This document shows positions 396-60,408 of a stretch of 64,000 nt of DNA, in pieces. Location: the NCBI GenBank assembly GCA_943704425.1, contig CALSCP010001986.1, positions 1-64,000 on the forward strand, written 5' to 3'. The stretch's first letter is position 1, and every line of letters starts with the position of its first letter. Position numbers and translations under genes: made by a program. This DNA is from Ministeria vibrans ATCC 50519 (lineage: Eukaryota; Protista; Filasterea). Under the pieces are notes generated by a model that was not told the origin of the DNA, did no database searches, and saw nothing but the letters and a program-made list of their open reading frames with translations.

Positions 396-2342
396 TGTTT
401 TTGGGACATGCACCAACGGGAATGCTTTTTTTTCCTGTCTGTGTTCTCCTGGCTACCAGGGATCCAACTGCGACGACGACATTGATGAATGTGCGTCGTC
501 GCCTTGTGTTTATGGTAACTGCACAAATCTTGTCAACGACTATGCCTGTGTATGTCGCCCAGGCTACTTCGGCATTCTGTGTCACCTTGACGAAGACGAG
601 TGCGCGTCGTCGCCATGCGAAAACGGTGGTGAATGTTTCAATGGCGAGGCACAGTTTACGTGTGGTTGTACCCCCGGTTGGACAGGCTCTACATGTACCA
701 GTGACGTCAATGAGTGTTCGTCTAGTCCCTGCTCCAATGGCGGTGTGTGCGTCAACGGCGCTGATGCATTTGCCTGTAGCTGTGCGGCGGGGTTTACTGG
801 TCTGCTCTGCTCAACTAACATTGACGAGTGTCTGTCGTCGCCCTGTCACAATGGAGGCGAATGTGTTGACTTGGCCAACGCACACTCTTGCACTTGCACC
901 GCCGGGTTTTCCGGCACTCTGTGCGAGCTCGACGTGTGCTCGGCAATGCCCTGTCACAACGGTGGCACTTGCTCACGACAGGGATCCCTGGACTTTGTCT
1001 GTGCCTGTCATGGAAACTCGACTGGTGCTCTTTGCGAGACAGTTGAGTGTCCATCCGGTATGAGCCTCGACGCGAGTGCCACCTGCACGAACTGTTCCGC
1101 GAATTTCTTCAAGAATTACGTCTCGTTCAACGCCTGCTCACCGTGTGCCTCCCATGCGTCCACTTTGGGTCTTGAGGGTGCAACTGAGTGCTCCTGTGAC
1201 GCAGGTTACACACCTTCAACGGCAAACACCACTGTGTGTACCGCATGCCCGGATGGAAAGTTCAAATCTGAGACGGGCGCGGGACTCTGCCTGACTTGTC
1301 CTGCGTGTTCAGCCTCAGGCGAAATCCGTGTCCACGGTTGCTTCGGTGCTGCAACCACGTCTGACGATGTAATGTGTGCGCCCGGTGTGCTCTCGAATGT
1401 GTCGCCAACCATTAGCGCCGGCGGAGCGCTTGTCTCGTCGGGTGTGTGCACCCACATATTTTTCCGGGCTGGCGCGAATCTAACCGGTGTTGCGCTGCCG
1501 CGCATTGGCGTGAGTCTTGCCATGCCACCCAACGTGTCCGTGTTTTTGAACTACGACGATGCTGAGATTGTGGGCGATGTCTGCATCTCTCTCTGTCTTC
1601 CTGCCGAACTTGCCGATGCCGCGTCTCTGCTGCTTCGCCACAAACCCACACTTGTGAGCGATGAATGGACGGACGTTCCCAATGCGGTGATAGACGAGCG
1701 CACACCTACCTCTGTACGTTACTGTTTCACTCTTGGCGGGAGTACGCAACGACGACGACGTCGTCGTCAGGTCTCCACCATCCCCTTTGGCGTGTTTAGT
1801 GTCACAAGTGGCGCTTCTTCGCCATCCGATTCGTCCAATTCGACGTACATTCTCATCGGTGCGGGTGTGGCGGGCGCCTTGGTTGCCCTCTTTAGCATCA
1901 TTTTCTGTTGCTGGTGTTGTTGTCGGCGACAGAACCGACAGAGAAGTCCCGGCAAGAAGAATAGCACCACGCGCATGCTGTCGGATCGACGTGAGTCTAC
2001 TTTTAGCACTGCTTTTGACGCTCCTCTACCCGCTGGCTCGCGCAACTTTTCACTTATTGACTGGGCCAACATGAATGCACTTGCAGCCGCCACGAGTACC
2101 AAGGAGACCAGTGTTCCCGAGGAAGACCCTCAGCGTCACGGTAAGTAATACGACGTTGGTATTCCTACTCTTATTCTTATTTTTTTTCATTGTTGTGGTG
2201 TAGAAACCATCACTGTCGACTATTGTGATGAAGAAACATTCTATTACGGTCAACATGCTTCGTCGCAAGAAGATTTGTCGCACTTGAAGGGGCCACCAAT
2301 GAACATGTCTGGGGGTATGGAGACAACACAATCCTTCCTAAT

Positions 2343-2374
<32 letters not shown>

Positions 2375-2632
2375 TATAATAATAATAATTATTATTATTA
2401 TTATTTTTATTGTAGATGAATCTGGGAACAAGCTACGTGAAATGCGTGTAGCTTTGCAGAAGCGTCCAAGGTTGTCTGTTGGTATGAATAAGAATAATAA
2501 TTATTATTATTATTATTATTATTGTTTTCCTAATAATAAATTTAATTATTAATCATAATAAATAATTTTTCTCCTTCAGAAAACCTTGCTCTGCCACTCA
2601 TTGTGCGAATTAACGGTAAAAATAACAACATC

Positions 2633-2705
<73 letters not shown>

Positions 2706-4155
2706 TAAATTAATAATGACGTTATAAAATAATTATAATAATAAGAAGAATAATAATAATAATAATATTTTTGTACTTTTAATATTATTATGTTTAATTA
2801 TTTTTTAGAATCAAAGTATGTGAAGATTGGCTCGCCAACTCATGTTGCCCCAGGTAACAGATCAGCATTATTATTATTGTTTTTCATACGTCTTCTTTTA
2901 GTTGGCATTTACAATGTGGCATCAAATCCCAATGATGTTGTACCACCCATCCAATCACGCGACGAGGCACTGACCACACGTCATCGACGACTAGATTCAG
3001 TTGACTCGATGAGTACGCTCCAACAAAACCATAATAATAATGATTATTATTATTATTCTTCATTTTTGTATTTCTTTGTATTATTAGTGACCACCTATGA
3101 GGGTGACGTGACTGAAGCCCCCATAGTCCCTGTTGCAGTGCCTCCTCTTACAGCACCCTATGCAGTGCCGTCTCGCGTGGCACGTGGAGGCGACTCCCGA
3201 CGACAAGCACAGCTGATCGCCTGTGCCCTGTCAAACAGAGCGACCACGAGCGATGCTCTTCCATCGGTTGTGGCCGCTTCGCATGTGCAAGGCGCAGCAT
3301 CCCATCCTCTCTCTCATGCTCAAAATGTCCTCGAAGCACCACCCACGCCCGACAGCGACGCACCACGTCCGCGCGGTGGACCCAGGCCCAGTCTGACCGC
3401 GGCGCTTGATCGACCCCTGATGGTATCGACACCTCAACAAAATGCCGTGCTTCGTCCCAAGATGGCGCCCCCTATCAAGGCGCCACAGCAGAAAAAGTCG
3501 AGGCGAGAACCGTATGGTGGGAATCCCGAAGTGACAGAAGGTAACACCTATAATATATATAAACTAATAATAATTATTGTATTATTATTAATAATTCTTT
3601 CTTTGCATTTTTTTGGTAGCGGATGCGAGGAAGAACGCAAACTTTGGGACACTCGAGCGGGCGATGCAGGATCTTGATGACGAGAAGAAACCGGCGGATC
3701 GGGTGAGCGGCTCACCTACAATGCTGGGACCAAGTCGATTGACGGACGACTGGGGCGACTCTGCCGCCTACGTTCAGTCACAGTGGTTGCAAGACCGCGC
3801 TCAGGCGGCAATCGTGCAGCGCCGCACTTCACGAGACGCTGGTCAACCGCCTTCTTCTCCTGCCGCTGCTGCTTCTGCTGCTCAGAGCAATGCGAGTGAT
3901 GAAGCACGGCGTCGATCTGTGGCACAACAGATCATGGGAGTTGTGCTGAACTTGGACAAGTTGATAGCAAAAGGTTCATGCTCAGCAACAGAGCGCGCTA
4001 AACTGACTGAGCAACGACGTGCTGCTCTGGTTCGTGTCGAGCGTCTTGATGTGTTCTCTGTGGCCGAACTTGAAGCGCTCAAGAGTCAGCCGGCAACCCG
4101 AGCGGCGGCCATTCGGCGGGGATCTTACCTGGAGTCGATGAGAGCTCCCAGATAA
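1..4155 (+). CDS. Single-pass EGF-repeat receptor-like protein (Notch-like ectodomain, non-Notch tail); 5' end lies outside the window
   Basis: Frame +1 is open from base 1. It encodes 9 complete plus 1 partial EGF repeats (DECASSPC...), Cys-rich GCC2/GCC3-type repeats (CPSG..C..C, CPDGKFK), an RRRRRR site and a TM helix (ILIGAGVAGALVALFSIIF) followed by CCWCCCRR. Exons: 1-2140, 2204-2314, 2416-2481, 2580-2615, 2809-2853, 2902-3012, 3088-3540, 3620-4155. All introns are GT-AG and splicing stays in frame to TAA. Confidence 0.85.
2344..2766. repeat. (TAA)n/(TTA)n microsatellite tracts in the EGF receptor introns
   Basis: Visible trinucleotide runs at ~2344-2402, ~2490-2525 and ~2632-2766. Confidence 0.9.
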
Positions 4156-36142: not shown

Positions 36143-37184
36143 ATGTCGAAAATATTTGTAACGCGCAGTGGCGTGCGCATAGCGTACGAAGTGCTGAATG
36201 GACGGTCGGCAGCACTACCACTTGTGGCTATCCACGGTCTGTCAAGTGTGCGTCAGGATTGGGGCGTGTTTTGCACAGAGCTGGCGAAAGAGCGTCCTGT
36301 GGTTGTGTTTGACAATCGGGGAATGGGCGAATCGAGTGTGAGCGAACCCGGAACCTTTTCGCTCTCGGACATGGCGCAGGACACGACGGAGTTGGTGTCG
36401 TCGTTGGGGTGGACGCGCATTGCACTGCTGGGGCTGTCAATGGGCGGGATGATCGCGCAACAGCTGTTAGTCGACGACCGCCATCCGTCCTTCCTCGTCG
36501 ACCGTCTGGTGCTGATGGGCACGCACAGCGGAGGGCCCACCGCCGTCCTGGGCAGTGCATTCCGCCAAGCGATGCTTGATCAGTTTTCCATGGCGCCTCC
36601 GCCCAGCACTCCGGAGACAGCGGCGCAGCGAGCACAGCGGCACAAGTCACTGGTACATCATATTGACTTGACTGTGTTCTTTCTTCACATTTCACAATTT
36701 TCTGTTGTGTTATTTTCTTCCACTTCTCTCTAGATGCGACCTATTGTGGCACTCAACTACACACCTGCGTTTGTGCGTGATCACCCCAGCAAATTTGAGT
36801 CGCTTCTCAGCGAAATGATCCTCCACCGTCGGTCCGTCAGAGGAATCCGTACAGCAACAACAACACATACCAACAACAACAACACATGTATATCTAACAA
36901 CTCTGTGTGTACATGCGTGCGTAGTGGGCCAAGTGCAGGCAATTGCTCAATATGATGTGAGCAAGCAGATCGCGACGGGGATCCGACAGACAACGCTGAT
37001 CGTGCACGGCGACGCAGACGAAGTTGTCGACCATGCGAACGCAGTGGCGCTGCAGCGGACTCTGGGGGCGCGCGCACAGCTGCTAACGGTCCCGCGTGGG
37101 GGTCATTTAGTGTACAATATGGATGGTGGGGTGAGCGCGAGGGTGGTGGGTGACTTTTTGAGGAGAGGAGAATCCAAATTGTGA
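36143..37184 (+). CDS. Alpha/beta-fold hydrolase with a C-terminal PTS1 (SKL)
   Basis: Motifs AIHGL, FDNRGMGES, nucleophile GLSMGG, acid HGDADEVV and His GGHLV. Three exons; the protein ends GESKL*. Confidence 0.9.
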
Positions 37185-37230: not shown

Positions 37231-38964
37231 TCAGTAGGGGTAGTCTGTTGGAGGAGGGACATCGGGCATGAGATGGTGCGGGCTATCGTAAGGGGGTGGG
37301 GGCGGGTAGGGGTACGAGTTGGGTACATGGGGGGAGTAGGAGGAGTAAGAGTAAGGGTGGTGGGGATGGGGTGGTGGAGGCGGGCGGGAGGGCGACGGTG
37401 GGTAGTGGTAGTCGATGGGAGGAGAAGATGCCTGGTGCGGCGGGTAGGCTGAGTAGTAATAACCGCCGTGAGTGGGAGCGGCATCGTGGGGCGCGTGGAG
37501 GGGACGGTGTTGCTGGTGGTAGGGGGGAGGGGAGTGCGGAGGGGGTGGGTACTCGCCGGTGTAATATGCGGACTGTGGGGGTGGTGCCTCCGGGTAGTAC
37601 TCATGTGGTTGCTGATAGACTTCGTAGCCAGGTGGCACCCTTTGTGGTGGTGGTGGTGGTGGTGGTAGACCTTGGCTGATGGGTTCGGAGTACTTGTTGC
37701 CACGACGACCGTGCTCCTCTTCATCTTGCACTGCCCTGTCGAGGCTGTGAAAACCATCGTTCCAGACGGTGCCTGCGGCATGCGCAGCCGCCCGCTTCGA
37801 ACGAGGACGTTTTTTGGGACGGTGCCGATAGGCCGAGTCAGCCGGCGTCTCGTCGTCGGTGCCGTCATTTGCATCGTCGGGGTCGCTGGTGTGACGTGAT
37901 GACCTGTCAAGCGCGTGTTTGGCGGGTCGTGTGATCGCTTCGAAGGGCACTTCGGCAGTGCCACGGCCCTCGACAATGCCTTCGCCTTCGTAGTAGCACA
38001 CGAGTCTCAGGTTGCTGTCGGCGCCCGTGTCGGAAATGATCTTCTTGTTGAGACCATTGGCCTTGCGAACGCGCTGCTTCGAAGGTGTCACCTCCATCTC
38101 CTTGTAGATGAGCCAGCCGGCTTTGGTCGAATACGATTTGCTCCACGATCGGTTGTCTGTCCATCGCGCCACAAGGGTCGCATCAAAGATAAAACACTGC
38201 AGAAAAAAGAAGCGCATGAATTTTAGGCGGTTTTGTTTTGCCACAACGAATTGGAATTTTTAAAACGAGAAAAGAACCATTGTCGAGCAGAAAGCAGCGG
38301 AGCGACGAAGCGACAGGCGGGTGCACGGAACCAGGCAACATATTTGACAGGCGACGCAGACGGCAGAGACGCGGAAGAGCAAACAAAAAGGCATTTTTGC
38401 TCCAAGTTGTTCACACTTGTCAAAAATTGTCAAGACGAACGTTTGTTTAGGGACACAAAGAACAAAGCGCACAGCGGAATTGAAGCGTGGAATCACGAAA
38501 AAAACAAAAGGGGCGACAGCTACGAAGAGGTGGTGGCGAAGCAGCGGCGGCGAGAAGAGGCTTGCGCTACAGCGAAGGGAGACCAAAAACGACACTGAGA
38601 AAAAAAAAACGAAAGAAAAGAAAGAAGAAAGGAAAAAGAGAGAAAGAGGAGAGGGGAGAGGGGAGCAAGAGAGTGTGGAAGGAGAGGATGGGAGAAGTTG
38701 GAGATGGCGTACGTCACCCGGACGGATTTGCGACTTCTCCTCTGTCGTCAGATGATGCCCCAAGATACTCCATTCGCCCAGACGCGCCTTGTGGAAGAGC
38801 TGCTGCGCGCCTGGGGCGGTGAGGGTGCCGTCGGGCGACGTGGGAATCCGGAAGTTGTCCATGGCTGTGCCGCCTGACGAGTGGCTGCGCTTGGCACGGG
38901 CCGTCGTGTCCGCGCTCCGTCCGTCCACACCCACTACGATTTCGTCGCTTTCCGACGACGACAT
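37231..38964 (-). CDS. WOPR (Gti1/Pac2, Wor1-family) DNA-binding protein with a Pro/His/Tyr-rich C-terminus
   Basis: Exon 38964-38713 joins exon 38196-37231 in phase 0. The product reads AQQLFHKARLG...EEKSQIRPGD|CFIF...VARWTDNRSWSKS...WLIYKE...KANGLNKKIIS...LRLVCYY, matching the WOPR pattern LFEA..G...ER..I.SG.VF...RWTDG..WSPSR...FL.Y.E...GL.KKT.S...HLVSYY. Confidence 0.82.
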
Positions 38965-39279
38965 CGTCAAACGTGACTCAAATGTCAAAGATGAAAGTAG
39001 TGAAACGAAACGTATTTAACGTGAATAACGTCGGAAGGAATGAGTATTTATGATTGAATATGGAAAAAGACATAGTACACACACACAGACACACACCCAC
39101 CCACCACATACACTTAAAACTTAAAAGTTTCACATGTACGTACACACATACACTTATATATGCCTCAAGGCATTTTTGAAAGTCGAAAGCCGTCATCCAA
39201 TAAAGATCAAAATTTTAATATCTTATTATTCACTTTCTTTTTCTACCTCCCGCCCATATACAATTAACCTTTTGTCAGT

Positions 39280-50779: not shown

Positions 50780-53700
50780 GCAAAACCGACAAGAAAATAC
50801 CAGCACTGCAGTCCTTTCATTCGGAGATTGCCGTTCTCAATGTGTCCGACGGAGGTAGTCCATGGCGGTCGAGCGTAAACACACACATGTCCTTGGCTGA
50901 CTGACGCTTTTCGATTTTGCAGGCTCGCACGTCGTTGCTCTGCTCCACAGCGGCGCTGTGGTACTCTGGTGCCGCGCCACTGACCGGCTCTCTGTTCTTC
51001 CCCCCGCACCCGATTTGCGAGGCTCCGCTGCCACTGTGGTTGACTCGACGGCGCGCGTCTATGCCAGCTGTGACGGAGAGTCGGTGCTGGTGTCGACGCG
51101 TGCTGGTAGGTTCCTTTGGGATGCTACCATGGCCGATCGCCGTGTCGACAGCGAGTCCACGTCCATTTGGTATACAGTGCCGACCAGTGTAGAGTCCGAC
51201 AGTGATGGTGGTGGTGGTGGTGGTGGTGGCGCGCGCTCGGCGACGCCTGTCGCGCCTGAGCCCACCATTGTTGGAGGAGCAATGGAGACGTGTGTGTTTC
51301 GCACGAATGAGACTGACATTGACGGTGGTCGCTCGTGTTGTGTGGTGACTGCGGTGCACACGGGTGTACGCGTACACATTGCCTCCGTCACCGTTCGTTT
51401 CCGAGTTGTACGCTCGTCGGGCAGGGTGGATACCAAGTGGCGCATTGTGCGTGCCTCGTGCGACCGCGAGCATCGTCTGCCCTCAACCGTGGTCAGCTGT
51501 CGATTGTGTTGCGCTTCAGATGGCATTGGGGTGGCACTTGCAGCAAACCTTCAGTCCATGGCTCCGTCGCATCTCTTCCTCTTCTCATCGCGTGTGCAAA
51601 AGGCTCTCACAACCGTGTCGGCCGTGCAGCGGGCCGAACGCCCCTCTCGCAGTCACTGGATCCGCGACATTGTCTTTTTATGCGATGGTCTTCTCTTGGC
51701 GACACTCACCGGAGGCGGCTTGCTGTCGCTGTACACACGCGCTGGCGAGCCACTCATCATTGCCCCAAATGAGCCGCGATTTCTCCCCTCCATTGCGTGT
51801 CCTCTCTTTGGTGCAGCAATTGACGTTGACTTTGTCAGCATGGCCGTGCATCCCGATGGTCGGGAGCTTCTCTGCTGCGATGGTCATAGTACTGTGGCAC
51901 TACGAGTGCGTGACGCACTCGACTCAACCGCCATTGTACGCACGCTCGCCTTGAACACGGCGCAGACGGCGTCGCTGCAGCCCAGCAATGTCTCGTCGCC
52001 GCCATTGGATGTTACCACGGCGCAGTTGGTGCACGCCTGGCGACTCGGCTGTGGCGAGCCGGGTGGTCCCAGCTCCTGTCGTCGCTTGCTCGATTCTCTG
52101 GCACTTGTGGGACAGCTCATCTGCTCCCACGCTTCCAACCCTCCGTCGTCGTCGTCGTCGTCGTCGTCGTTACGCCATCCCGTCAATCACATATTATTGT
52201 TGTTGCGACAACTTCTTTCCGCCAGCATGCTCGCCTCGGCCGACGGTGGCACATTGCCCCTTGTGCTTGACACTATCACGGGTCTCTTCAACGTCTTGAT
52301 TGACTTTCGCGACCCTCTTGCCTGCATGCACTTTTTACGCCATGCGGAACTTGGCCTTCAGTTGCACGTGAGTCACCTGTCATTGCACTCGGCCTCTCGT
52401 CTTCCATCCGCAGCACTCGACTCACCTTCGCGCCCCTCAACGGCCACCTCGTCATCCTTTTTCTCAGCACCAAGCGCCACAGCGGCCCCTCCCGACACCA
52501 ATCTCGTGTCGTTCCCACTCAACGATTCGGTCGATTTTGAGTTTGAGGGTGGGCCGCCGTCGCTGGCATCCATGTCGGGCGATTGGCGTCCCGGCGGCAT
52601 CACAATGCTCGATGAGACCGAAGACGTCGCGCTGCACCGTGCCGACGACAGCAGCGACAACGTTGAGTTTGGTCTGGGCAACTCAGGGCTTGTACCTCTG
52701 GTGCCCGTGTTTCAGCAGCACCACGCAAGTGCAAACGACACAGTTGTGTTGTGTGATGCCGATCAGAACTTGAGTGCCGCCTACAACTACGATCTGTACG
52801 GCGACGTACGCTGTGCACCCATCATACTCGATGCACTTTGGACGCGTGTTCTGCTCCTGTGCGATGAGCCGTCGCTCAAGAATGATTCCGCGGCTCTTGC
52901 CGTCTCACATCAGATTGCCCATCGACTTCGTCGCAATCACGCTTCGCTGGCAGTCTCGGCGCGCTCAAGCGGTGTGGTAAACGACGTTCTCTTGGGACAC
53001 GAGGCGATGATGCAGGAGGACGCGCTGGCGGCGGCGGCTTGCTATGCGCGTGCGGGGCCGCAGCATCGCTGGCAGCATATGGCGGCGCTGTTGCTTGCCT
53101 ACGACCTACACGGCGCACTTGAGCTGGCCCTTGACTGTGTGAGCGTTGTGGGACTGCGTGCAGGGCGCGAATCCCTACAATGGTGGCAGCCCGAGCTGGT
53201 GGCTCACGCCAGCGACATTCACGCCTATCCTTTTCTGACGGTCAGCGAGACACACTCGGACGCAGCTGCACTGTGTCTGGCTATGCTTGGCGAGACCATG
53301 GCGTGCTACTTTGAGGATGCTTCGTCACTATGTGTGCCCACTCCTGTCTCCTCACTCATGCCGCAGCTCATGTGTGAAGATGCACGTCGCGCTGTGGCAC
53401 TCTCAGCGTCATTTTCTATGCTCGACCGTCGTCGTGTGACCGCCGCCTGCGTCGCCAATACGACCTTGGAATGTGTATGGACACCTCAGCGCGCTTGTGA
53501 ATTATTACTCATTGCCGGAGCTGCGGCACGCGCCGCTCAGTTTGCTGATCGAGTTGGTGCATGGAAGACAGCGCTCGTGGCTGCTCGTGCCTGTCAGCAA
53601 GACCGCCTGGCTCAAGAACTTTTGCAGCGACTGGGCACACGCGCACTCGACACGGGTGACCATGCCCTTCTGGTGGATGTGTGTGAAGCGTGTGCTCGCA

Positions 53701-56700
53701 CTGATCTTCTCGCAGTTTGGGCTCGTCTCGTGTCCACCTGTGCCGATCGTCTCGAGTCGGCAGTGCGGTCGTTGCCGCCCAGTGTGCCTGTGGACTTTTA
53801 CTTGCCACAACCTCCCATCTATTGCCTCGATGCGGACTCTACGCCCATCGAAACGCTCGTCATTGAGGATGCGCACCAAGTGCCCGTCGACGGTGTGCTC
53901 AATGCGAGCGTTGTCGCGGCAGCCGATCGCGTTGCGCAAATGCAATTGAATGCACGTTCCCAGTCGGCGGCGGCGGCGGCAGCGGCGGCGGCAGCAGCGG
54001 CCGCAGCCGTCGGGACTGTCTCACCCCTATCGGAAGAGGATGAACACGACGCGTTGCACGATGTTGCAGCAGAGACGAACGTTCGCCGTGTCGTCGCCGG
54101 ATGGCTACAGCGCACCGTTTTGCTTCTCAATGCGGCAGGACACCTTCCAGGGTTGTGCTATACCCACGCAAGTCAATTGCGCGACGCAAACGGTGGCATT
54201 GACAACCTTGTGGCGGACTTTCCTCGGGAGCTGGCAACGCTTGCGCAACAAGAAAGCGACCGTGTGGACAGGACCGATCGACTTGACGACACGGAGGGCA
54301 ACGATGACATGGGCGGTGCAACCCTGGCTCAGGCGATGGCCAGCAACGCCTTCTCTCTTGTGACACGTGTCGCCTTTTTCATGCACGCTCGTGACACGGC
54401 CAATGTGCGTGTCCGACAGTTTGCAGCGCTTTCAACCTTTGAGCGAGCGACCGCAGCCGCCGAGATTGCTTCGGACTTTTCTCGTCTTCTCTCGTTTCCC
54501 CATCTCGTGGTTACCAACGAAGTGCATCAAGTGGTGTTGGGTTGGCTCGCGCAATCGTCGGCGCTCGACGGCGAAGCGTCCTCTGGTGTTCTGCCTACCA
54601 CCCTGCTTTTGCAGCTCTACGGCGACCCCAACTCCGTTTCCGTCGAGTCACATCCATTGCCCATTCGTGCTGCTCTCCGTCGCGCTCAGCGCCACCTGGA
54701 TGCGACGGGGGCGGCTTCGTGCCTTGCCGCACCGCCCCGACCCTTGCCGCTCCCGCGCATGCTCACGTACCTGTGCTTTTGCGAGACGATGTTTCTTGTG
54801 CTTGCGGGGGGTGCTCCCTCAGTGCCTGCTGCCGCTGTTGGACTTCGCCCGGCGCACCGTGTCGCACAGGCCGATGTCACGACCCATGCGCGTCCACAAC
54901 ACCCACTGCGCTCGTCCATGTCACAGGGACACCGACGCGCGCTTTTGGCTGCCGCTACTGTTGGCAAGTGGAGCGATCGTCCCACCACACCCATGCGAGT
55001 GTCGTTGGCGCGTCTTGATCGAACCCTCCAAGGCCTCACGGTTGACGGTAACGTTGCCAACGACGAAACTTCTCTCAATGTCTCGACACGTCGCACTGCA
55101 TTTTTGCATGTGCCATTGTCGCTCGAGATGGCGCTCAACGCGGCACATTCAACTCGTTCAGTCGTGTCGCACGTATCGCCGCAAAAGGTACTGACGATTG
55201 CTCCGCTCACGTTTGACGCGGATGAGACCGAATCGCTGCTGGATGCAACGGGTTGCTCTAGGGGCTCCCTGATCTCCTTGAGCAACTCGGACGATGGATT
55301 TTTGTCGATGCAGGCCATTGTGCAGGTGAAGGGGGAGGTTGAGGCGCCAGGACAGGCGGAGGCCGAGCATGAGACAGCCGCAGACGTGTCCAAGAACAGC
55401 TTTAGTCGCAGTCTTGAGATGACGCTCGACGAACTGTCAGAAGGACCGGCATGCTCGTCGGCTGTCGTTGTGTTGCCATCGCCTTTTCCGCTGCCAGCAT
55501 CGACCGCGCGAGCCGCGTACAACGAGAGCTTTCAGGCTTCAGTTGAGGAGACACTCAATGTCGCAGAAGAAGACGGCAGTGAAACGACGATGGACCAGAG
55601 AGAGCCCTTGTACTACCCGTCGTTGCATACGTACGATGATGCACCTGAACGTGACCTCGTGGCACCCTCGTCGTGCACGAGTTCCGTTGAGGCGTCTGCT
55701 GCGACATCGTTCTCCTCGTCGACGGCACTTTCGTCGCACGCCGATGCTGATCCGCTTGACAACTCCTATCGCCCGACATTGGCATCGACACTAGGGGACT
55801 CCTCTGTTTGCTTTGATGCCGACGAGGCTGAGACGGAGGGCGAGGCGACGGCGCGACGCGCCGCCTACATTGCAGATGTGCCCATGCCTGTGACTGTGTC
55901 GGAGCGACCACCATCGGCACCTCGACGCGCTCAGGGGTCGACAACGCAGGTGGTTGTGACCGGCGAAACGGAGGGTGGCAACAGTCCTGTCGTTGACCAT
56001 GACGACGATCATGATGGCGACGATGAGAGTCTTGCGTTGGAACTGACAGTGGACGAAGTGAGCTGCCTGGACATGTCCGCGGGGCGGCGGCCTATCTTGG
56101 TTGGAGAAGGAGAAGTAGGAGGAATGGTGACTCCGATGGGCCTGAGTGAGCTTGAGGGTAATACGCACGACGACTACTGTCGTGGCGACTACCACACCGA
56201 TGCCGAGGACGATTTGCTCGAGACAACGCTTGCGACACCCGAGGGATCGTACCGGTTCAGTGAGGGCGCAGCGACTCCCGAGCCCTTCTCGCTGAGTCTC
56301 TTCTCAGATCGTCCCGACTCTGTCGCTGCGTCTGCATCGGCGTCTGGCGCGTCATGGCAGCCTGCAACACTTCGCACACGCCCTTCCACGCGACCTGCAT
56401 CCTCGGCTCGCAGGAGTGTGTTGCGCACAGGCAGTGCCCCGTCCATGACGGCCACTGCGCCACTTGGACCGACAATGCTGACGGGCGACGACTGGGAGCG
56501 TGAACTACAGCAAGCCAATGCAACCACCTTGCGTGATATTGTGCGTCAGCAACACTCCGCATTGATGGGTCTTCTCACACTCAATGGGGCGGTTGTATCC
56601 GCGCCAGCTTCTCAGCTACGATCCCAGACACGACCGTTCACTCCTACCACAGCACCAGCACCGCTACCATCGACAACGGCTGCTCACGATCATCTTCATC

Positions 56701-58313
56701 TTCTTCGCTCCCCTGTCACATCACACATGGGTGCCCACGACGACAGCATGCCGCCTCCTTTGCTTGTACGTCGACCACCTGCCGCCTCTGTGTCCATCTC
56801 AGACCCGCGTTCCGGCTCCTCCTCTGGTCAAGACGAGTGTCCTGCTAATGGACCACCGCTGCTCCATCGACCGACTTTGTCTGCCGCTCGGCCACCTCTC
56901 CTTCGACCAGCACACGAACCCCGTATGCATTCGTCTGCCATTGTCGACAACGACATGCCTCTCTTGCGTTTGCCATCACGACGGCGCCACGAAGTAGGAC
57001 AGGCTCCACAGTCGTTTCAGTCCAGTCGTGACGACCTCTCTTTGCGACCCCGTGCCGAGTTTGCCTTTGTTCCGCCTCCCGTAGTCTCGAGGCACGTTCC
57101 CCTTGTCGTTGGTCAGGGGGGCCGGGCGCGTCGGGCGCGTCGGGCCCATCGCCGTCTTTTCTACCCGACACACACGGCTGTCGTGTACACTGCAACCAAA
57201 AGCGCGCCCATGCCCACGCCAGAGGGGTCACCACCGCCAGTTGCAACGAGGCGTGTTGTCACAGTGGACTCTGCCACATCACCGATTCGTTATGAGGCGA
57301 AACGTGCTGTTATGGCAACACAAACTGCCCCAGAACAAGTGTCCGTGGCACAGAACACTTGCATTGATACGTGTCACTCGGCGACACAGACGCACATCGC
57401 GCGCACCATCGTCGAAAGTGTACAGACGGAAGAAGAGCCAGTGCGTGTCAGTGCGAGTGTAACACAGACATCGACAAGGGAGACAGGTCCTGTGGCGACA
57501 CTGGCTGGACTCCACGTTGTACCGGGAGTGCTCCCACCTGCACTTGTTTTTGACGATGCAACCACCTCAACCGCTGAGGGTCTTGTGGGCGTTGCCGATC
57601 TCGACGGAGGTGAGCTTGTATGCCAGGCGATTGCGCAGGTACCCTTTGGCGGTCGGGAGGAGAAACAGGTGCAGGGACAGGCAATTGGAGGAGATCCTGT
57701 GACAGACGCACTCTTGGAACTGACTTTGGTTGGTCGCGAAGGAGATGATGAAGAGGAGGAGGAAGAGGAGGAGGAGGAGGATGAGCAGCTGGCGCAGCAG
57801 GAATCTGTATCGCTGTCGCGCCTGGAGGACCGACTGGCACACTTGAATGCGCTGTGTCGTGCACTAGAGCAACCTGATGAAGATGATGTGGAGGTGCATG
57901 AGCCAGACGGGCCGCCTCTTTTGGAGGAGATGGACTCGTTTCAGTTGGCTAACGACGAGAATGACGGAGTGTCCGTTGTAAGTGCGCAGTCTGCGGCTTT
58001 GTCGGTCGGTGGCAGCAGCAGCAGCAGCATCAGTGGCGGTGGACAACCCGCTGTCACGCGTGCGCCGTTTCAGGTCGTTGATGTGGACGTGGTGTACACG
58101 CACAACCACCCAACTGGCAGTGGTGAAAAGGGACGCAACGCAAAGTGGCTTCCGACGACTGCGCGAGGGACTCCGACCTCTGGATCGCCGCATGCCGAGC
58201 GCCGTCGTCAAATGCACGAGCAGCACACACGTGCACGTCTCAGTCAGGCCCAGCACCTGATGGACGGCATCCTGCACGCCCATCACATCGACATGACCGT
58301 ACTTCCTCTCTAA
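50780..58313 (+). CDS. CPLANE1: CPLANE1/JBTS17 (C5orf42)-like ciliogenesis protein; 5' end probably in the gap
   Basis: Exon 50780-50854 (KTDKKIPALQSF) joins exon 50923-58313. Blocks recalled from CPLANE1: L.SG.V.LW, WIRDI.F..DGLLLA....G.L.L.TR.GE.L, F.S...HP....L...DG, VWT..RA.ELL..AG....A...A..VG.WKT and PVDFYLP.PP.YC. Long low-complexity C-terminus. Confidence 0.78.
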
Positions 58314-58449: not shown

Positions 58450-60408
58450 TTACTGCGGCACTCGAATGGTCAGGCGAAAGGAGAGCTGCGTGACAATCTT
58501 CTGATCGTTTTGAGAGGTACCCTCAAGATTCACGGTAAACTCTGGTGCACTAATTGATATAACTTTGTAAGGAAGAGGCGGACAGTTCAATGCTGATAGT
58601 TGCGTACCCACTGGCGTCAATGGCGGTAAAGCGCACGACATCTTCGTGTGAGCCTAACGGCACATTTAGCTTCTCGGTGAGCTGGTGAACAAGATCGCGA
58701 GCAGACTGGACACCCTGCAGTGCCTGGCCAACCGATGTTGACGCTGTGCTGTCGCGCATGCGCTGCTGGTGAATGCTTTCGGTGACAGTGCCGGCCGCAC
58801 TGACCATCGACAGGAACTGCTCTTTGCTCTTCCTCCACTGGTCCGGGTGGATCGCACTGAGCTGCACCGCAAACGGCAGTGGCCGGTCACTGGGCCACTT
58901 CCCTGTAAAAACAACGACATTTTGGACTCCGAGCACATCGACAAGCTGGCTTGCGCCATGCGCGAGAGGCGCACGAAACTCAAAGGTGTGCTCAAGGGCA
59001 GAGCCCACTCCAAACACAGTGCGAAAGGATGCCTCAAAGTCGTCGAGGACGTACGCCTTTGCATCAAAGTGATCACTGAAGAGTGTCGAGTTGATGTGCA
59101 TTGCTTGCAGCACTACCGTGATGTGGATAGTGTGCGTGTCAATGGATTGGAGCAGCGCGTGCTGCCGTCGCAGTCCCTCGAGCGTGCTCTGGCTCTGTGC
59201 CACCAATGTTAACGCTGGTCCCCCATCCGCCTCCTCACATACAGTACTAGCTGTACTAGCATCGTTGCATAGTGCGCTGAGGAACGCTCGTTCGGCTTCG
59301 CGCATACGCGTGTCAAGACGCTCGCATGCGGCGCGCTCCCTTGCTCGTTGTTGGAGTGCCCTCAAATTTGCGCAAAAGGACTCGTCCGCATGTGACGGCG
59401 CATCAGCCGCAATGCCGTCACATGGCCCTGTTCCGCGCTCGACTGCAATGACAATGCGGATTCCAGCTGTTCCCTCGACATGCAGCAATGGCGGAGCTTT
59501 TATCGACGTTGACGCCGCGCATGTCGTTGACTTGCGGGTTGGTCTGTCCCACCTTTGAATTGTGTACACCCTCTCGTAATTGGTGTTGATTGACCCAAAG
59601 TATTCCATCTCGATGTCATCGTGCATGCAGTCAATCCCCAACTGAACTGCATTTGCCGCCCCCTGTAACGCCGCCTTGCCTGCCACACCGTATTGGGGAA
59701 CAACGCCAGCGACACTCGAAAGACGCTCAAGCATGCGACGGACTTTCGCAGCCTGCACGGAGCGGTCCACCTCCGACACGACCAGAGAAAGTCCGACATG
59801 TCCAGCACTCTCCCCAAAGAACAGTTGCTTGTCACGAAATTTTTGAGGGCTTTTCAATTCGACTGGAACTGTCGGGCGTGTGGCACTATTCCCTGCGATA
59901 TATATATAAATGAAAAGCTCAAAAAACATCATATGATTGATAACAATAATATTGTCAGGCAATTACCTCCACAAGCTGCGGAAAGAATCCACGAGGCGCA
60001 GCCGGCACGGAGATGGTCAGGCACGTTGGCTTGGTAAAGAAAGTTTTTCTCGGCAGTCGACACTTTTGCTTTGAAGACGCCTTCGAATCTCTGATCGAGA
60101 TCTCGAGAATAGAGCGCTCTTAAATCGAATTCGCGCAACACTACGCGTACATAGCCACCTTTGAGCGAATCTCCACGCGGAGACTCGTTGCAAGTGACTC
60201 GCACTGTGGTCGAAAGGTCGTCAATCAAACCGCCGCGAAAAAGCGCACTTGATGTGTGTATTGCGCGATCAGCCGACTCCACATCATGATCATGCATATG
60301 TAGAGTACTAGTAGGTGGACTTGTCACCGTACAAACAGGCTCCTCGACCTCAGCCGGCGCAACTCGATTGTGGTGGCGACGTTGCACTGGCGAGTTGGGC
60401 GTTGCCAT
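58450..60408 (-). CDS. Uncharacterised protein with an internal tandem duplication (two beta-rich domains, each with an amphipathic helical insertion)
   Basis: Exons 60408-59967, 59892-~58608 and 58549-58450 splice in frame through GT-AG introns. An internal repeat is visible in the protein. Confidence 0.7.

What the first reader, a model, noticed from the sequence alone, without database searches (positions are those of the whole stretch)
37231..38964. Fungal-type WOPR (Wor1/Ryp1/Gti1/Pac2) master-switch factor embedded among animal-type genes
Seen: the spliced product has both WOPR halves (RWTD..WS.S...LIY.E and GL.KK..S....LV.YY) joined by a short linker, with a host-style GTACG intron. 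Known: WOPR proteins are regarded as fungal-specific regulators of heritable morphological switches (Candida white-opaque, Histoplasma dimorphism). The neighbours (class IA-like PI3K, TLK, CPLANE1, ZGLP1-like) are not typical of fungi. Inference: WOPR either predates the animal-fungal split or was transferred, and may drive cell-state switching in this protist. The canonical WSPSR reads WSKSY here, which predicts altered DNA specificity; the RWTD Thr is retained.
Basis: partly seen in the sequence, partly recalled or inferred. Interest (0 to 1): 0.8.

Follow-up and report, generated by a model that had tools for sequence, protein, structure and literature searches.

The report
WOPR regulator gene in Ministeria
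This is a real two-exon gene for a WOPR (Gti1/Pac2) DNA-binding regulator in a marine single-celled relative of animals. The family was inherited from the common ancestor of animals and fungi, and its presence in such protists was already reported in 2023, so the gene is a new member of a known family.

Summary
A minus-strand gene runs from the ATG at 38964 through exon 1 (38713-38964), a 516-nt GTACGC...CAG intron and exon 2 (37231-38196). Together the two exons encode both WOPR halves.

- **Family:** exon 2 alone passes Pfam Gti1_Pac2 (25.1 bits, cut-off 23.6). Exon 1 aligns to the N-terminal WOPR part of filasterean homologues, ending exactly at the splice site.
- **Host:** almost certainly Ministeria vibrans (Filasterea). 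Its published assembly has 2860 scaffolds, the same count as this genome.
- **Paralogues:** the genome holds at least four WOPR genes. The scan had already noted WOPR genes on two other pieces of this genome.
- **Relatives:** the nearest are Capsaspora, Pigoraptor, Corallochytrium, Syssomonas, ichthyosporeans and choanoflagellates. In a tree they are split from fungal WOPRs by one branch (100/98 support). This fits vertical descent, not transfer from fungi.
- **Fold:** a close paralogue's domain folds confidently (pLDDT 93) and matches only Wor1 and YHR177W in the PDB.

Cell-state switching and altered DNA specificity remain untested. WSKSY is a signature of the filasterean subfamily.

The parts
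38713..38964 (-). Exon 1 (84 codons, first ATG of the open frame at 38964). Its last ~47 residues (38713-38853) are the N-terminal part of WOPR conserved region a.
   Evidence: Translation. BLASTP to P0004 (E 7e-7) and Capsaspora CAOG_00207 (E 3e-5) ends at the exon boundary. It also aligns to paralogue L001 at the same position.
38197..38712 (-). Intron, 516 nt, GTACGC...TTTTTTCTGCAG. It has an in-frame stop at codon 151 if retained.
   Evidence: Sequence; script. The junction is gap-free against homologues. No transcript was found to confirm it.
37231..38196 (-). Exon 2 (321 codons plus stop).
   Evidence: Pfam PF09729 25.1 bits, above the 23.6 cut-off.
38095..38196 (-). C-terminal part of WOPR region a (CFIFD...RWTDNRSWSKSYSTKAGWLIYKEM). 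RWTD is at 38155-38166 and WSKSY at 38131-38145.
38059..38094 (-). Short 12-residue linker (EVTPSKQRVRKA) between the two conserved regions.
   Evidence: Alignment. PMC4567300 gives 25 to ~100 residues for fungal linkers.
37990..38058 (-). WOPR region b core (NGLNKKIISDTGADSNLRLVCYY).
37792..37821 (-). Basic cluster RPKKRPRSKR, a candidate nuclear localisation signal (inferred from sequence only).
37234..37626 (-). Pro/Tyr/His-rich low-complexity tail (P 33%, Y 17%, H 11%). PPxY motifs lie at 37624-37635, 37519-37530 and 37288-37299.

Best explanation
The locus is an intact two-exon gene of Ministeria vibrans (Filasterea, Holozoa) for a protein of about 405 residues in the WOPR / Gti1_Pac2 family. 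It belongs to a filasterean subfamily with Capsaspora CAOG_00207, a Pigoraptor vietnamica protein and a second Ministeria paralogue. That subfamily is marked by RWTDN..WSK(A/S)YSTK.GWLIY and a short linker. The family was present in the opisthokont ancestor, was kept in all unicellular holozoan lineages and in fungi, and was lost on the animal stem. By analogy with Wor1 and YHR177W, the two conserved regions should interlock into one beta-sheet domain that binds DNA sequence-specifically. The basic cluster would take the protein to the nucleus, and the Pro/Tyr/His-rich tail with PPxY motifs would recruit partners. Shown here: the gene model, family membership, the paralogues, the holozoan distribution, the split from fungal sequences in the tree, and the WOPR fold of a close paralogue. 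Inferred only: DNA binding, nuclear location, tail function and any role in cell-state switching.
For: Exon 2 passes Pfam PF09729 on its own. Exon 1 is homologous to WOPR N-termini up to the splice site. The two top PDB sequence hits of exon 2 are the only two solved WOPR proteins, at non-significant E 0.2 and 0.36, while paralogue L001 hits them at E 1.4e-6 and 1.4e-5. A six-frame PF09729 search of the genome gives four loci. The profile search gives 289 hits at E<=1e-3. The best are from Pigoraptor, Capsaspora, Syssomonas, Choanoeca, Chromosphaera, Salpingoeca infusionum, Sphaerothecum, Corallochytrium and Hartaetosiga. Six relatives were scanned against PF09729: four homologues (two of them unnamed or Ministeria-like) and one Ministeria paralogue locus, plus P0001. 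All six pass at 39.7-78.7 bits. In the careful tree, one branch (100/98) separates the holozoan clade from the clade whose named members are fungi. This gene sits in a 99/95 filasterean subclade. The AlphaFold model of paralogue C2426's domain has pLDDT 93.3 and pTM 0.86. Its only significant Foldseek PDB matches are 4m8b, 4qtj and 4qtk (TM 0.66-0.73, E 1e-7 to 1e-5), and the next match is at E 0.06. Host: 2860 scaffolds and 29,797,085 bp in the M. vibrans paper, against 2860 contigs and 29,722,531 bp here. Literature.
Against: No transcript of this particular gene was found, whereas paralogue C2426 has two assembled transcripts. Exon 2's own Pfam score is only just above the cut-off. The canonical WSPSR is replaced, and the -3 Lys of the fungal KRWT PKA-type site is Ala here, so fungal-type DNA specificity and regulation cannot be assumed. 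Of the holozoan-side rows, 18 of 34 in the first tree and 15 of 30 in the careful tree are unnamed (Logan or ENA assemblies), so their taxa are unknown. The tree is unrooted.
Confidence: 0.88

Rival explanations
1. The gene came into a filasterean ancestor by horizontal transfer from a fungus.
For: The family is far larger in fungi, and most literature calls it fungal-specific.
Against: Homologues occur in Filasterea, Pluriformea, Ichthyosporea and Choanoflagellata. All rows of known holozoan origin lie on one side of a 100/98 branch from the clade with named fungi, in 100% of bootstrap trees. The holozoan members share signatures that the three named fungal rows aligned here lack, namely WS(D/K)S plus one extra residue and a short linker. 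Merényi et al. place the family's birth at the Opisthokonta node.
Confidence: 0.03
2. The contig is fungal contamination in an assembly made from a non-axenic culture.
For: The assembly came from metagenomic culture data, and 27 small scaffolds were flagged as possible contaminants.
Against: The gene lies at least 37 kb inside a contig of 64 kb or more with even GC. The contig carries a class I PI3K with a Ras-binding domain, an EGF array and PAN and WSC proteins. The nearest relatives of the gene are filasterean, not fungal. Paralogues lie on three further contigs.
Confidence: 0.01
3. It is a WOPR-fold protein that no longer acts as a sequence-specific transcription factor, or it is a silent or decaying paralogue.
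For: The loop motif has changed (WSKSY) and the Pfam score is marginal. No transcript or identical protein was found in the collections, while its paralogue has transcripts. No WOPR motif is enriched in the window.
Against: The 405-codon frame is intact. The invariant residues of the family alignment (R, W, D, W, Y, K, Y) are kept. A 66%-identical sister sequence (P0001) exists elsewhere, which suggests constraint. The own genome's records are withheld from the look-ups, so absence of a transcript means little.
Confidence: 0.08

Closest known systems
Capsaspora owczarzaki CAOG_00207 (XP_004365078.1, 'hypothetical protein'); also the Ministeria paralogue on contig C2426 (P0002) and a Pigoraptor vietnamica protein (P0003)
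   Same: They share a 99/95-supported filasterean subclade. They also share RWTDN..WSK(A/S)YSTK.GWLIY, a short linker followed by G(L/I).KKI(L/I), and an N-terminal domain position. PF09729 scores are 45.9 bits for P0005 and 43.1 bits for P0002.
   Different: The C-terminal tails are unrelated; here the tail is Pro/Tyr/His-rich with PPxY motifs. This gene has WSKSY and ARWT, where the others have WSKAY and ERWT. Identity to the nearest sequence (P0001, unknown organism) is only 66% over the core.
Candida albicans Wor1 (PDB 4QTJ/4QTK) and S. cerevisiae YHR177W (4M8B), the solved fungal WOPR domains
   Same: Same Pfam family. Two conserved regions occur in the same order, with RWTD, W, the (L/I)(V/I)Y.E strand and the LRLV.YY strand. 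The paralogue's model superposes on them at TM 0.66-0.73, and nothing else in the PDB matches significantly.
   Different: WSPSR is replaced by WSKSY plus one extra residue. The linker is 12 residues against 25 to ~100 in fungi. The host is a holozoan protist. Sequence identity in the structural alignment is about 17-19%. No functional data exist for any holozoan member.
The Gti1/Pac2 homologous group mcl_169 of Merényi et al. 2023 (Nat Ecol Evol, PMC10406608)
   Same: It documents the family in Filasterea (2 copies), Corallochytrea (1) and Choanoflagellata, with none in Metazoa and birth at the Opisthokonta node.
   Different: That study did not include Ministeria and found none in Ichthyosporea (Creolimax, Sphaeroforma). 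Here, members turn up in Chromosphaera and Sphaerothecum, in three more choanoflagellates, in both Pigoraptor species and in Syssomonas.

Membership tests
WOPR / Gti1_Pac2 (Pfam PF09729) | Score at or above the Pfam gathering cut-off | tested here: met
   Exon 2 alone scores 25.1 bits against the 23.6 cut-off, E 2.2e-5, profile positions 46-87. The six-frame search gives 32 bits with neighbouring pieces in the frame. The joined protein was not scored (step left out).
WOPR / Gti1_Pac2 (Pfam PF09729) | Two conserved regions (about 80 and 50 residues) in order, separated by a variable linker | tested here: met
   Region a is split over exon 1 and the start of exon 2. Region b is at 37990-38058 and the linker is 12 residues.
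WOPR / Gti1_Pac2 (Pfam PF09729) | Family-wide conserved residues (RWTD, the following Trp, Y.E, GL.KK, LRLV.YY) | tested here: met
   All are present. The invariant columns R, W, D, W, Y, K, Y of the 42-row alignment are kept.
WOPR / Gti1_Pac2 (Pfam PF09729) | Fungal consensus loop WSPSR and the KRWT PKA-type site | tested here: not met
   WSKSY plus one extra residue, and ARWT. None of the 18 holozoan-clade rows displayed in the alignment has WSPSR, so this marks the fungal branch, not the whole family.
WOPR / Gti1_Pac2 (Pfam PF09729) | WOPR fold: one beta-sheet with interdigitated strands from both regions | tested here: inconclusive
   Met for paralogue C2426, which is 70% identical over the core of region a: pLDDT 93.3, and its only significant PDB matches are 4m8b, 4qtj and 4qtk. 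Not tested on this gene itself, because that needs the joined product.
WOPR / Gti1_Pac2 (Pfam PF09729) | Sequence-specific DNA binding (fungal motif TTAAAGTTT) and transcriptional regulation | not testable with these tools
   The motif scan gives 6 near-matches against 8.25 expected. Three lie in the AT-rich 250 bp upstream of the ATG, which is not significant.
Filasterean WSK(A/S)Y subfamily of holozoan WOPRs (defined here) | Clade membership and the shared RWTDN..WSK(A/S)YSTK.GWLIY signature | tested here: met
   A 99/95 clade with Pigoraptor vietnamica, Capsaspora, Ministeria C2426, P0004 and P0001. Signature shown.

The most novel reading that the evidence does not exclude
Holozoan WOPRs are an old clade of their own with a remodelled DNA-contact loop. 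The clade is expanded to four or five genes in Ministeria and was lost at the origin of animals. As in fungi, they may act as self-sustaining switches between life-cycle states (filopodial, aggregative, cystic) in the unicellular relatives of animals. That would make WOPR-based cell-state memory an ancestral opisthokont mechanism that animals discarded.
Probability: 0.15. Interest if true: 0.7.

Novelty: new member of a known kind. Interest (0 to 1): 0.3.

Why it matters
Papers as late as 2026 still call WOPR a fungal-specific DNA-binding domain. Its presence in every unicellular holozoan lineage means it dates to the opisthokont ancestor and was lost in animals. That fact is already published as one sentence and one table row (Merényi et al. 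2023), so this gene adds a further species rather than a new idea.

What remains open and testable is function. No holozoan WOPR has been studied, and Capsaspora (CAOG_00207 is in the same subfamily) is experimentally tractable (my own knowledge, not checked here). The subfamily's changed loop makes DNA-binding specificity a concrete question for a protein-binding microarray or DAP-seq.

Tried and rejected
- **Word searches:** word-based protein searches with exon 2 and with paralogue L001 found nothing. That is why the single big profile search was used.
- **Exact-product look-ups:** two neighbouring single-exon genes, tried to name the host, were blank because own-genome records are withheld.
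- **Metagenome scan:** the scan for a spliced transcript of this gene was blank.
- **Alignment A2:** MAFFT placed exon 1 over the wrong columns, so A2 was discarded and A3 used instead.
- **Corallochytrium as host:** rejected. Its WOPR protein (Clim_evm40s239) is only 38% identical to the best locus in this genome.
- **PF09729 match downstream of L001:** the stretch past the stop is a GAGAGAGTTCAA-type satellite, not coding sequence.
- **Structure papers:** the two WOPR structure papers (PMC4115540, PMC4152732) are not held. I therefore could not list the DNA-contacting residues or test the 'altered specificity' claim.
- **Fifth WOPR-like locus:** C1613 (L007) does not reach Pfam significance.
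- scoring, folding or looking up the joined two-exon protein, and any junction-spanning pattern search.

Full report
**Observation**

- The first ATG of the open frame is at 38964, and exon 1 runs to 38713 (84 codons).
- The intron starts GTACGC at 38712, is 516 nt long and ends TTTTTTCTGCAG at 38197.
- Exon 2 runs from 38196 to the stop at 37231 (321 codons).
- Exon 2 begins CFIFDATLVARWTDNRSWSKSYSTKAGWLIYKEM, continues with a 12-residue linker, then reads NGLNKKIISDTGADSNLRLVCYY.

I left out every step that needs the joined protein: Pfam on the whole product, folding it, exact-product look-ups and junction-spanning patterns.

**Family membership**

Exon 2 alone passes the Pfam gathering cut-off for PF09729 Gti1_Pac2 (25.1 against 23.6 bits, E 2.2e-5). 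Exon 1 alone has no Pfam hit. Three comparisons place its last ~50 residues in the N-terminal part of the WOPR domain:
- homologue P0004, E 7e-7;
- Capsaspora CAOG_00207, E 3e-5;
- the Ministeria paralogue L001, at the same position.

Each alignment ends at ...I.PG/I.TG, directly before the VFVFD/VYIYD block that exon 2 opens with as CFIFD. The multiple alignment has no gap at the junction, so homology supports the splice model.

Against all PDB sequences, the two best hits of exon 2 are the only two solved WOPR proteins. They are not significant on their own (E 0.2 and 0.36). The language-model atlas also returned only Gti1/Pac2 clusters (a lead only).

**The gene is one of a small family in this genome**

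A six-frame PF09729 search of the whole assembly gives four loci:
- C1768 (42.7 bits; 50.4 bits as a protein piece);
- C2330 (29.1 bits);
- this one;
- C2426, a close paralogue with WSKAY and the same short linker.

A fifth WOPR-like stretch on C1613 stays below Pfam significance. The scan had already noted WOPR genes on two other pieces of this genome. The C1768 domain hits YHR177W (4m8b, E 1.4e-6) and Wor1 (4qtj, E 1.4e-5) by sequence.

**Host**

The assembly has 29,722,531 bases in 2860 contigs. The supplementary methods of Ocaña-Pallarès et al. 2022 (PMC9492541) describe the Ministeria vibrans ATCC 50519 assembly as 2860 scaffolds and 29,797,085 bp. The WOPR genes here group with those of the filastereans Capsaspora and Pigoraptor. 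Corallochytrium is excluded, because its WOPR is only 38% identical to the best locus here.

The window also carries genes that do not look fungal:
- a class I-type PI3K with Ras-binding, C2, PIK and kinase domains;
- an EGF array;
- PAN and WSC proteins.

Class I PI3K is absent from fungi; that statement rests on my own knowledge, not on a test here. I take the host to be Ministeria vibrans, a marine filasterean, with about 0.9 confidence.

**Relatives**

Both word-based searches were blank, and the question turns on who the relatives are. I therefore ran the one profile search, using alignment A3 of the Ministeria pieces. It returned 289 proteins at E<=1e-3. The best-scoring ones that carry a source name are all unicellular holozoans:
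- Filasterea: Pigoraptor vietnamica, P. chileana, Capsaspora owczarzaki CAOG_00207;
- Pluriformea: Syssomonas multiformis, Corallochytrium (Clim_evm40s239);
- Choanoflagellata: Choanoeca perplexa, Salpingoeca infusionum, Hartaetosiga balthica;
- Ichthyosporea: Chromosphaera perkinsii (two proteins), Sphaerothecum destruens.

P0002 is a spliced transcript-derived protein of the C2426 paralogue, from a JGI and a Logan assembly, and carries PF09729 in the collection. Six relatives were scanned against PF09729: the homologues P0001, P0002, P0005, P0009 and P0018, and the Ministeria paralogue locus L001. All six pass at 39.7-78.7 bits.

**Tree**

The first tree used 150 domain rows and 144 columns, with the quick method. 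It split 34 rows from 116 rows at SH-aLRT 99. The smaller side held all 16 rows of known holozoan origin.

Ten further proteins were looked up. Three of the eight from the large clade carry names, and all three are fungal:
- Mycena;
- Martensiomyces;
- an Exophiala/Lithohypha 'global transcription regulator Sge1'.

A careful tree of 64 rows without the longest branches gave these results:
- The same split has support 100/98 and appears in 100% of bootstrap trees.
- This gene is sister to P0001 (100/90), a 120-residue fragment from an 877-nt contig of an unnamed NCBI record.
- Both sit in a 99/95 clade with Pigoraptor vietnamica, P0004, Ministeria C2426 and Capsaspora CAOG_00207.

The tree is unrooted, and 15 of the 30 holozoan-side rows in it are unnamed. 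Within those limits the pattern is what vertical descent from the opisthokont ancestor predicts. It is not what transfer from a fungus predicts.

**Fold**

I could not fold this gene's product without joining its exons. Instead I folded the contiguous domain of the C2426 paralogue from its transcript (L012:424-810), using a 42-row alignment. The model has pLDDT 93.3 and pTM 0.86. Foldseek against the PDB gives only four significant matches, all WOPR: 4m8b, 4qtj and two chains of 4qtk (E 1.4e-7 to 1.1e-5, TM 0.66-0.73). The next match is at E 0.06. The subfamily therefore has the WOPR fold. For this gene itself that remains an inference from 70% core identity.

**What is already known**

Merényi et al. 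[quoted passage not shown] Their Supplementary Data 4b row mcl_169 covers IPR018608 with 564 proteins. It gives:
- birth at node 128, the Opisthokonta node;
- mean copy numbers of 2 in Filasterea, 1 in Corallochytrea, 0 in Ichthyosporea, 1 in Choanoflagellata, 0 in Metazoa and 0 in Nuclearia.

No other paper in the library links Gti1/WOPR with holozoans. The Ministeria genome paper's held supplements do not mention the family. Fungal papers up to 2026 still call the domain fungal-specific.

**Mechanism**

Most likely this is a nuclear, sequence-specific DNA-binding regulator. The parts would work as follows:
- The WOPR domain spans roughly residues 38-153 of the spliced product.
- A basic cluster RPKKRPRSKR (37792-37821) is a candidate nuclear localisation signal.
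- A Pro/Tyr/His-rich tail carries three PPxY-type motifs and could recruit WW-domain partners or act as an activation region.

All of this is inferred.

WSKSY in place of WSPSR is a conserved signature of the filasterean subfamily. Every holozoan member shown lacks WSPSR and has one extra residue there. Whether this changes DNA specificity could not be tested, because the structure papers that list the DNA contacts are not held. The fungal KRWT PKA-type site reads ARWT here and ERWT in the closest relatives. The Thr is kept but the upstream Lys is not.

Near-matches to the fungal WOPR motif are not enriched in the window (6 against 8.25 expected). Three of them cluster in the AT-rich 250 bp upstream of the ATG, which I do not regard as evidence.

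**Verdict**

The gene is real and correctly modelled, and it belongs to the WOPR family in a non-fungal host. It is best filed as a new member of a known kind.
- the Ministeria paralogues;
- holozoan members in Ichthyosporea, Pigoraptor, Syssomonas and further choanoflagellates;
- a well-supported holozoan/fungal split;
- a confident WOPR fold for the filasterean subfamily.

Function remains open.

Noticed in passing
L001 (G000:C1768:1034-4606), minus strand 1720-3519: In the C1768 paralogue the WOPR domain lies at the C-terminal end of a 600-codon open frame, after a long poly-Gln and acidic region. Fungal WOPRs usually have it at the N-terminus. The frame ends at a GTAAGA that may be a donor. 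A GAGAGAGTTCAA-type satellite follows directly and produced a spurious extension of the Pfam match.
   Followed up: partly
L007 (G000:C1613:21252-24521), minus strand 1441-1779: A fifth, divergent WOPR-like stretch (RRWRDGRRW ... GLTKLVV ... LKLVSY) matches P0001 at 29.6 bits but gets no Pfam hit. It may be a degenerate family member.
   Followed up: partly
L004 (G000:C2426:17625-20966) against P0002 / L012 / L013: The transcript-derived protein of the C2426 paralogue differs from the genome at one residue or more (Q against L in FQLSA.ADSQ). The genomic copy has an assembly gap (run of N) over its 5' part, so the genome's gene model there is incomplete.
   Followed up: no
tree: P0008 (Pigoraptor chileana) and P0010 (Chromosphaera perkinsii): A filasterean and an ichthyosporean WOPR are unusually close (end branches 0.25 and 0.23, support 99/96). 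This may be slow evolution, or cross-contamination between transcriptome and genome data sets.
   Followed up: no
window 39117-39218: Three of the window's six one-mismatch matches to the fungal WOPR motif TTAAAGTTT fall within 150-250 bp upstream of this gene's ATG, in an AT-rich stretch. There is no exact match and no overall enrichment.
   Followed up: partly
window 50958-58313 (+) and 58550-59962 (-): A 2451-codon and a 470-codon open frame have no Pfam family at E<=1e-5.
   Followed up: no
window 36924-37184 (+): The upstream neighbour ends only 47 bp from this gene's stop codon (convergent genes), so the 3' untranslated regions must be very short or overlap.
   Followed up: no
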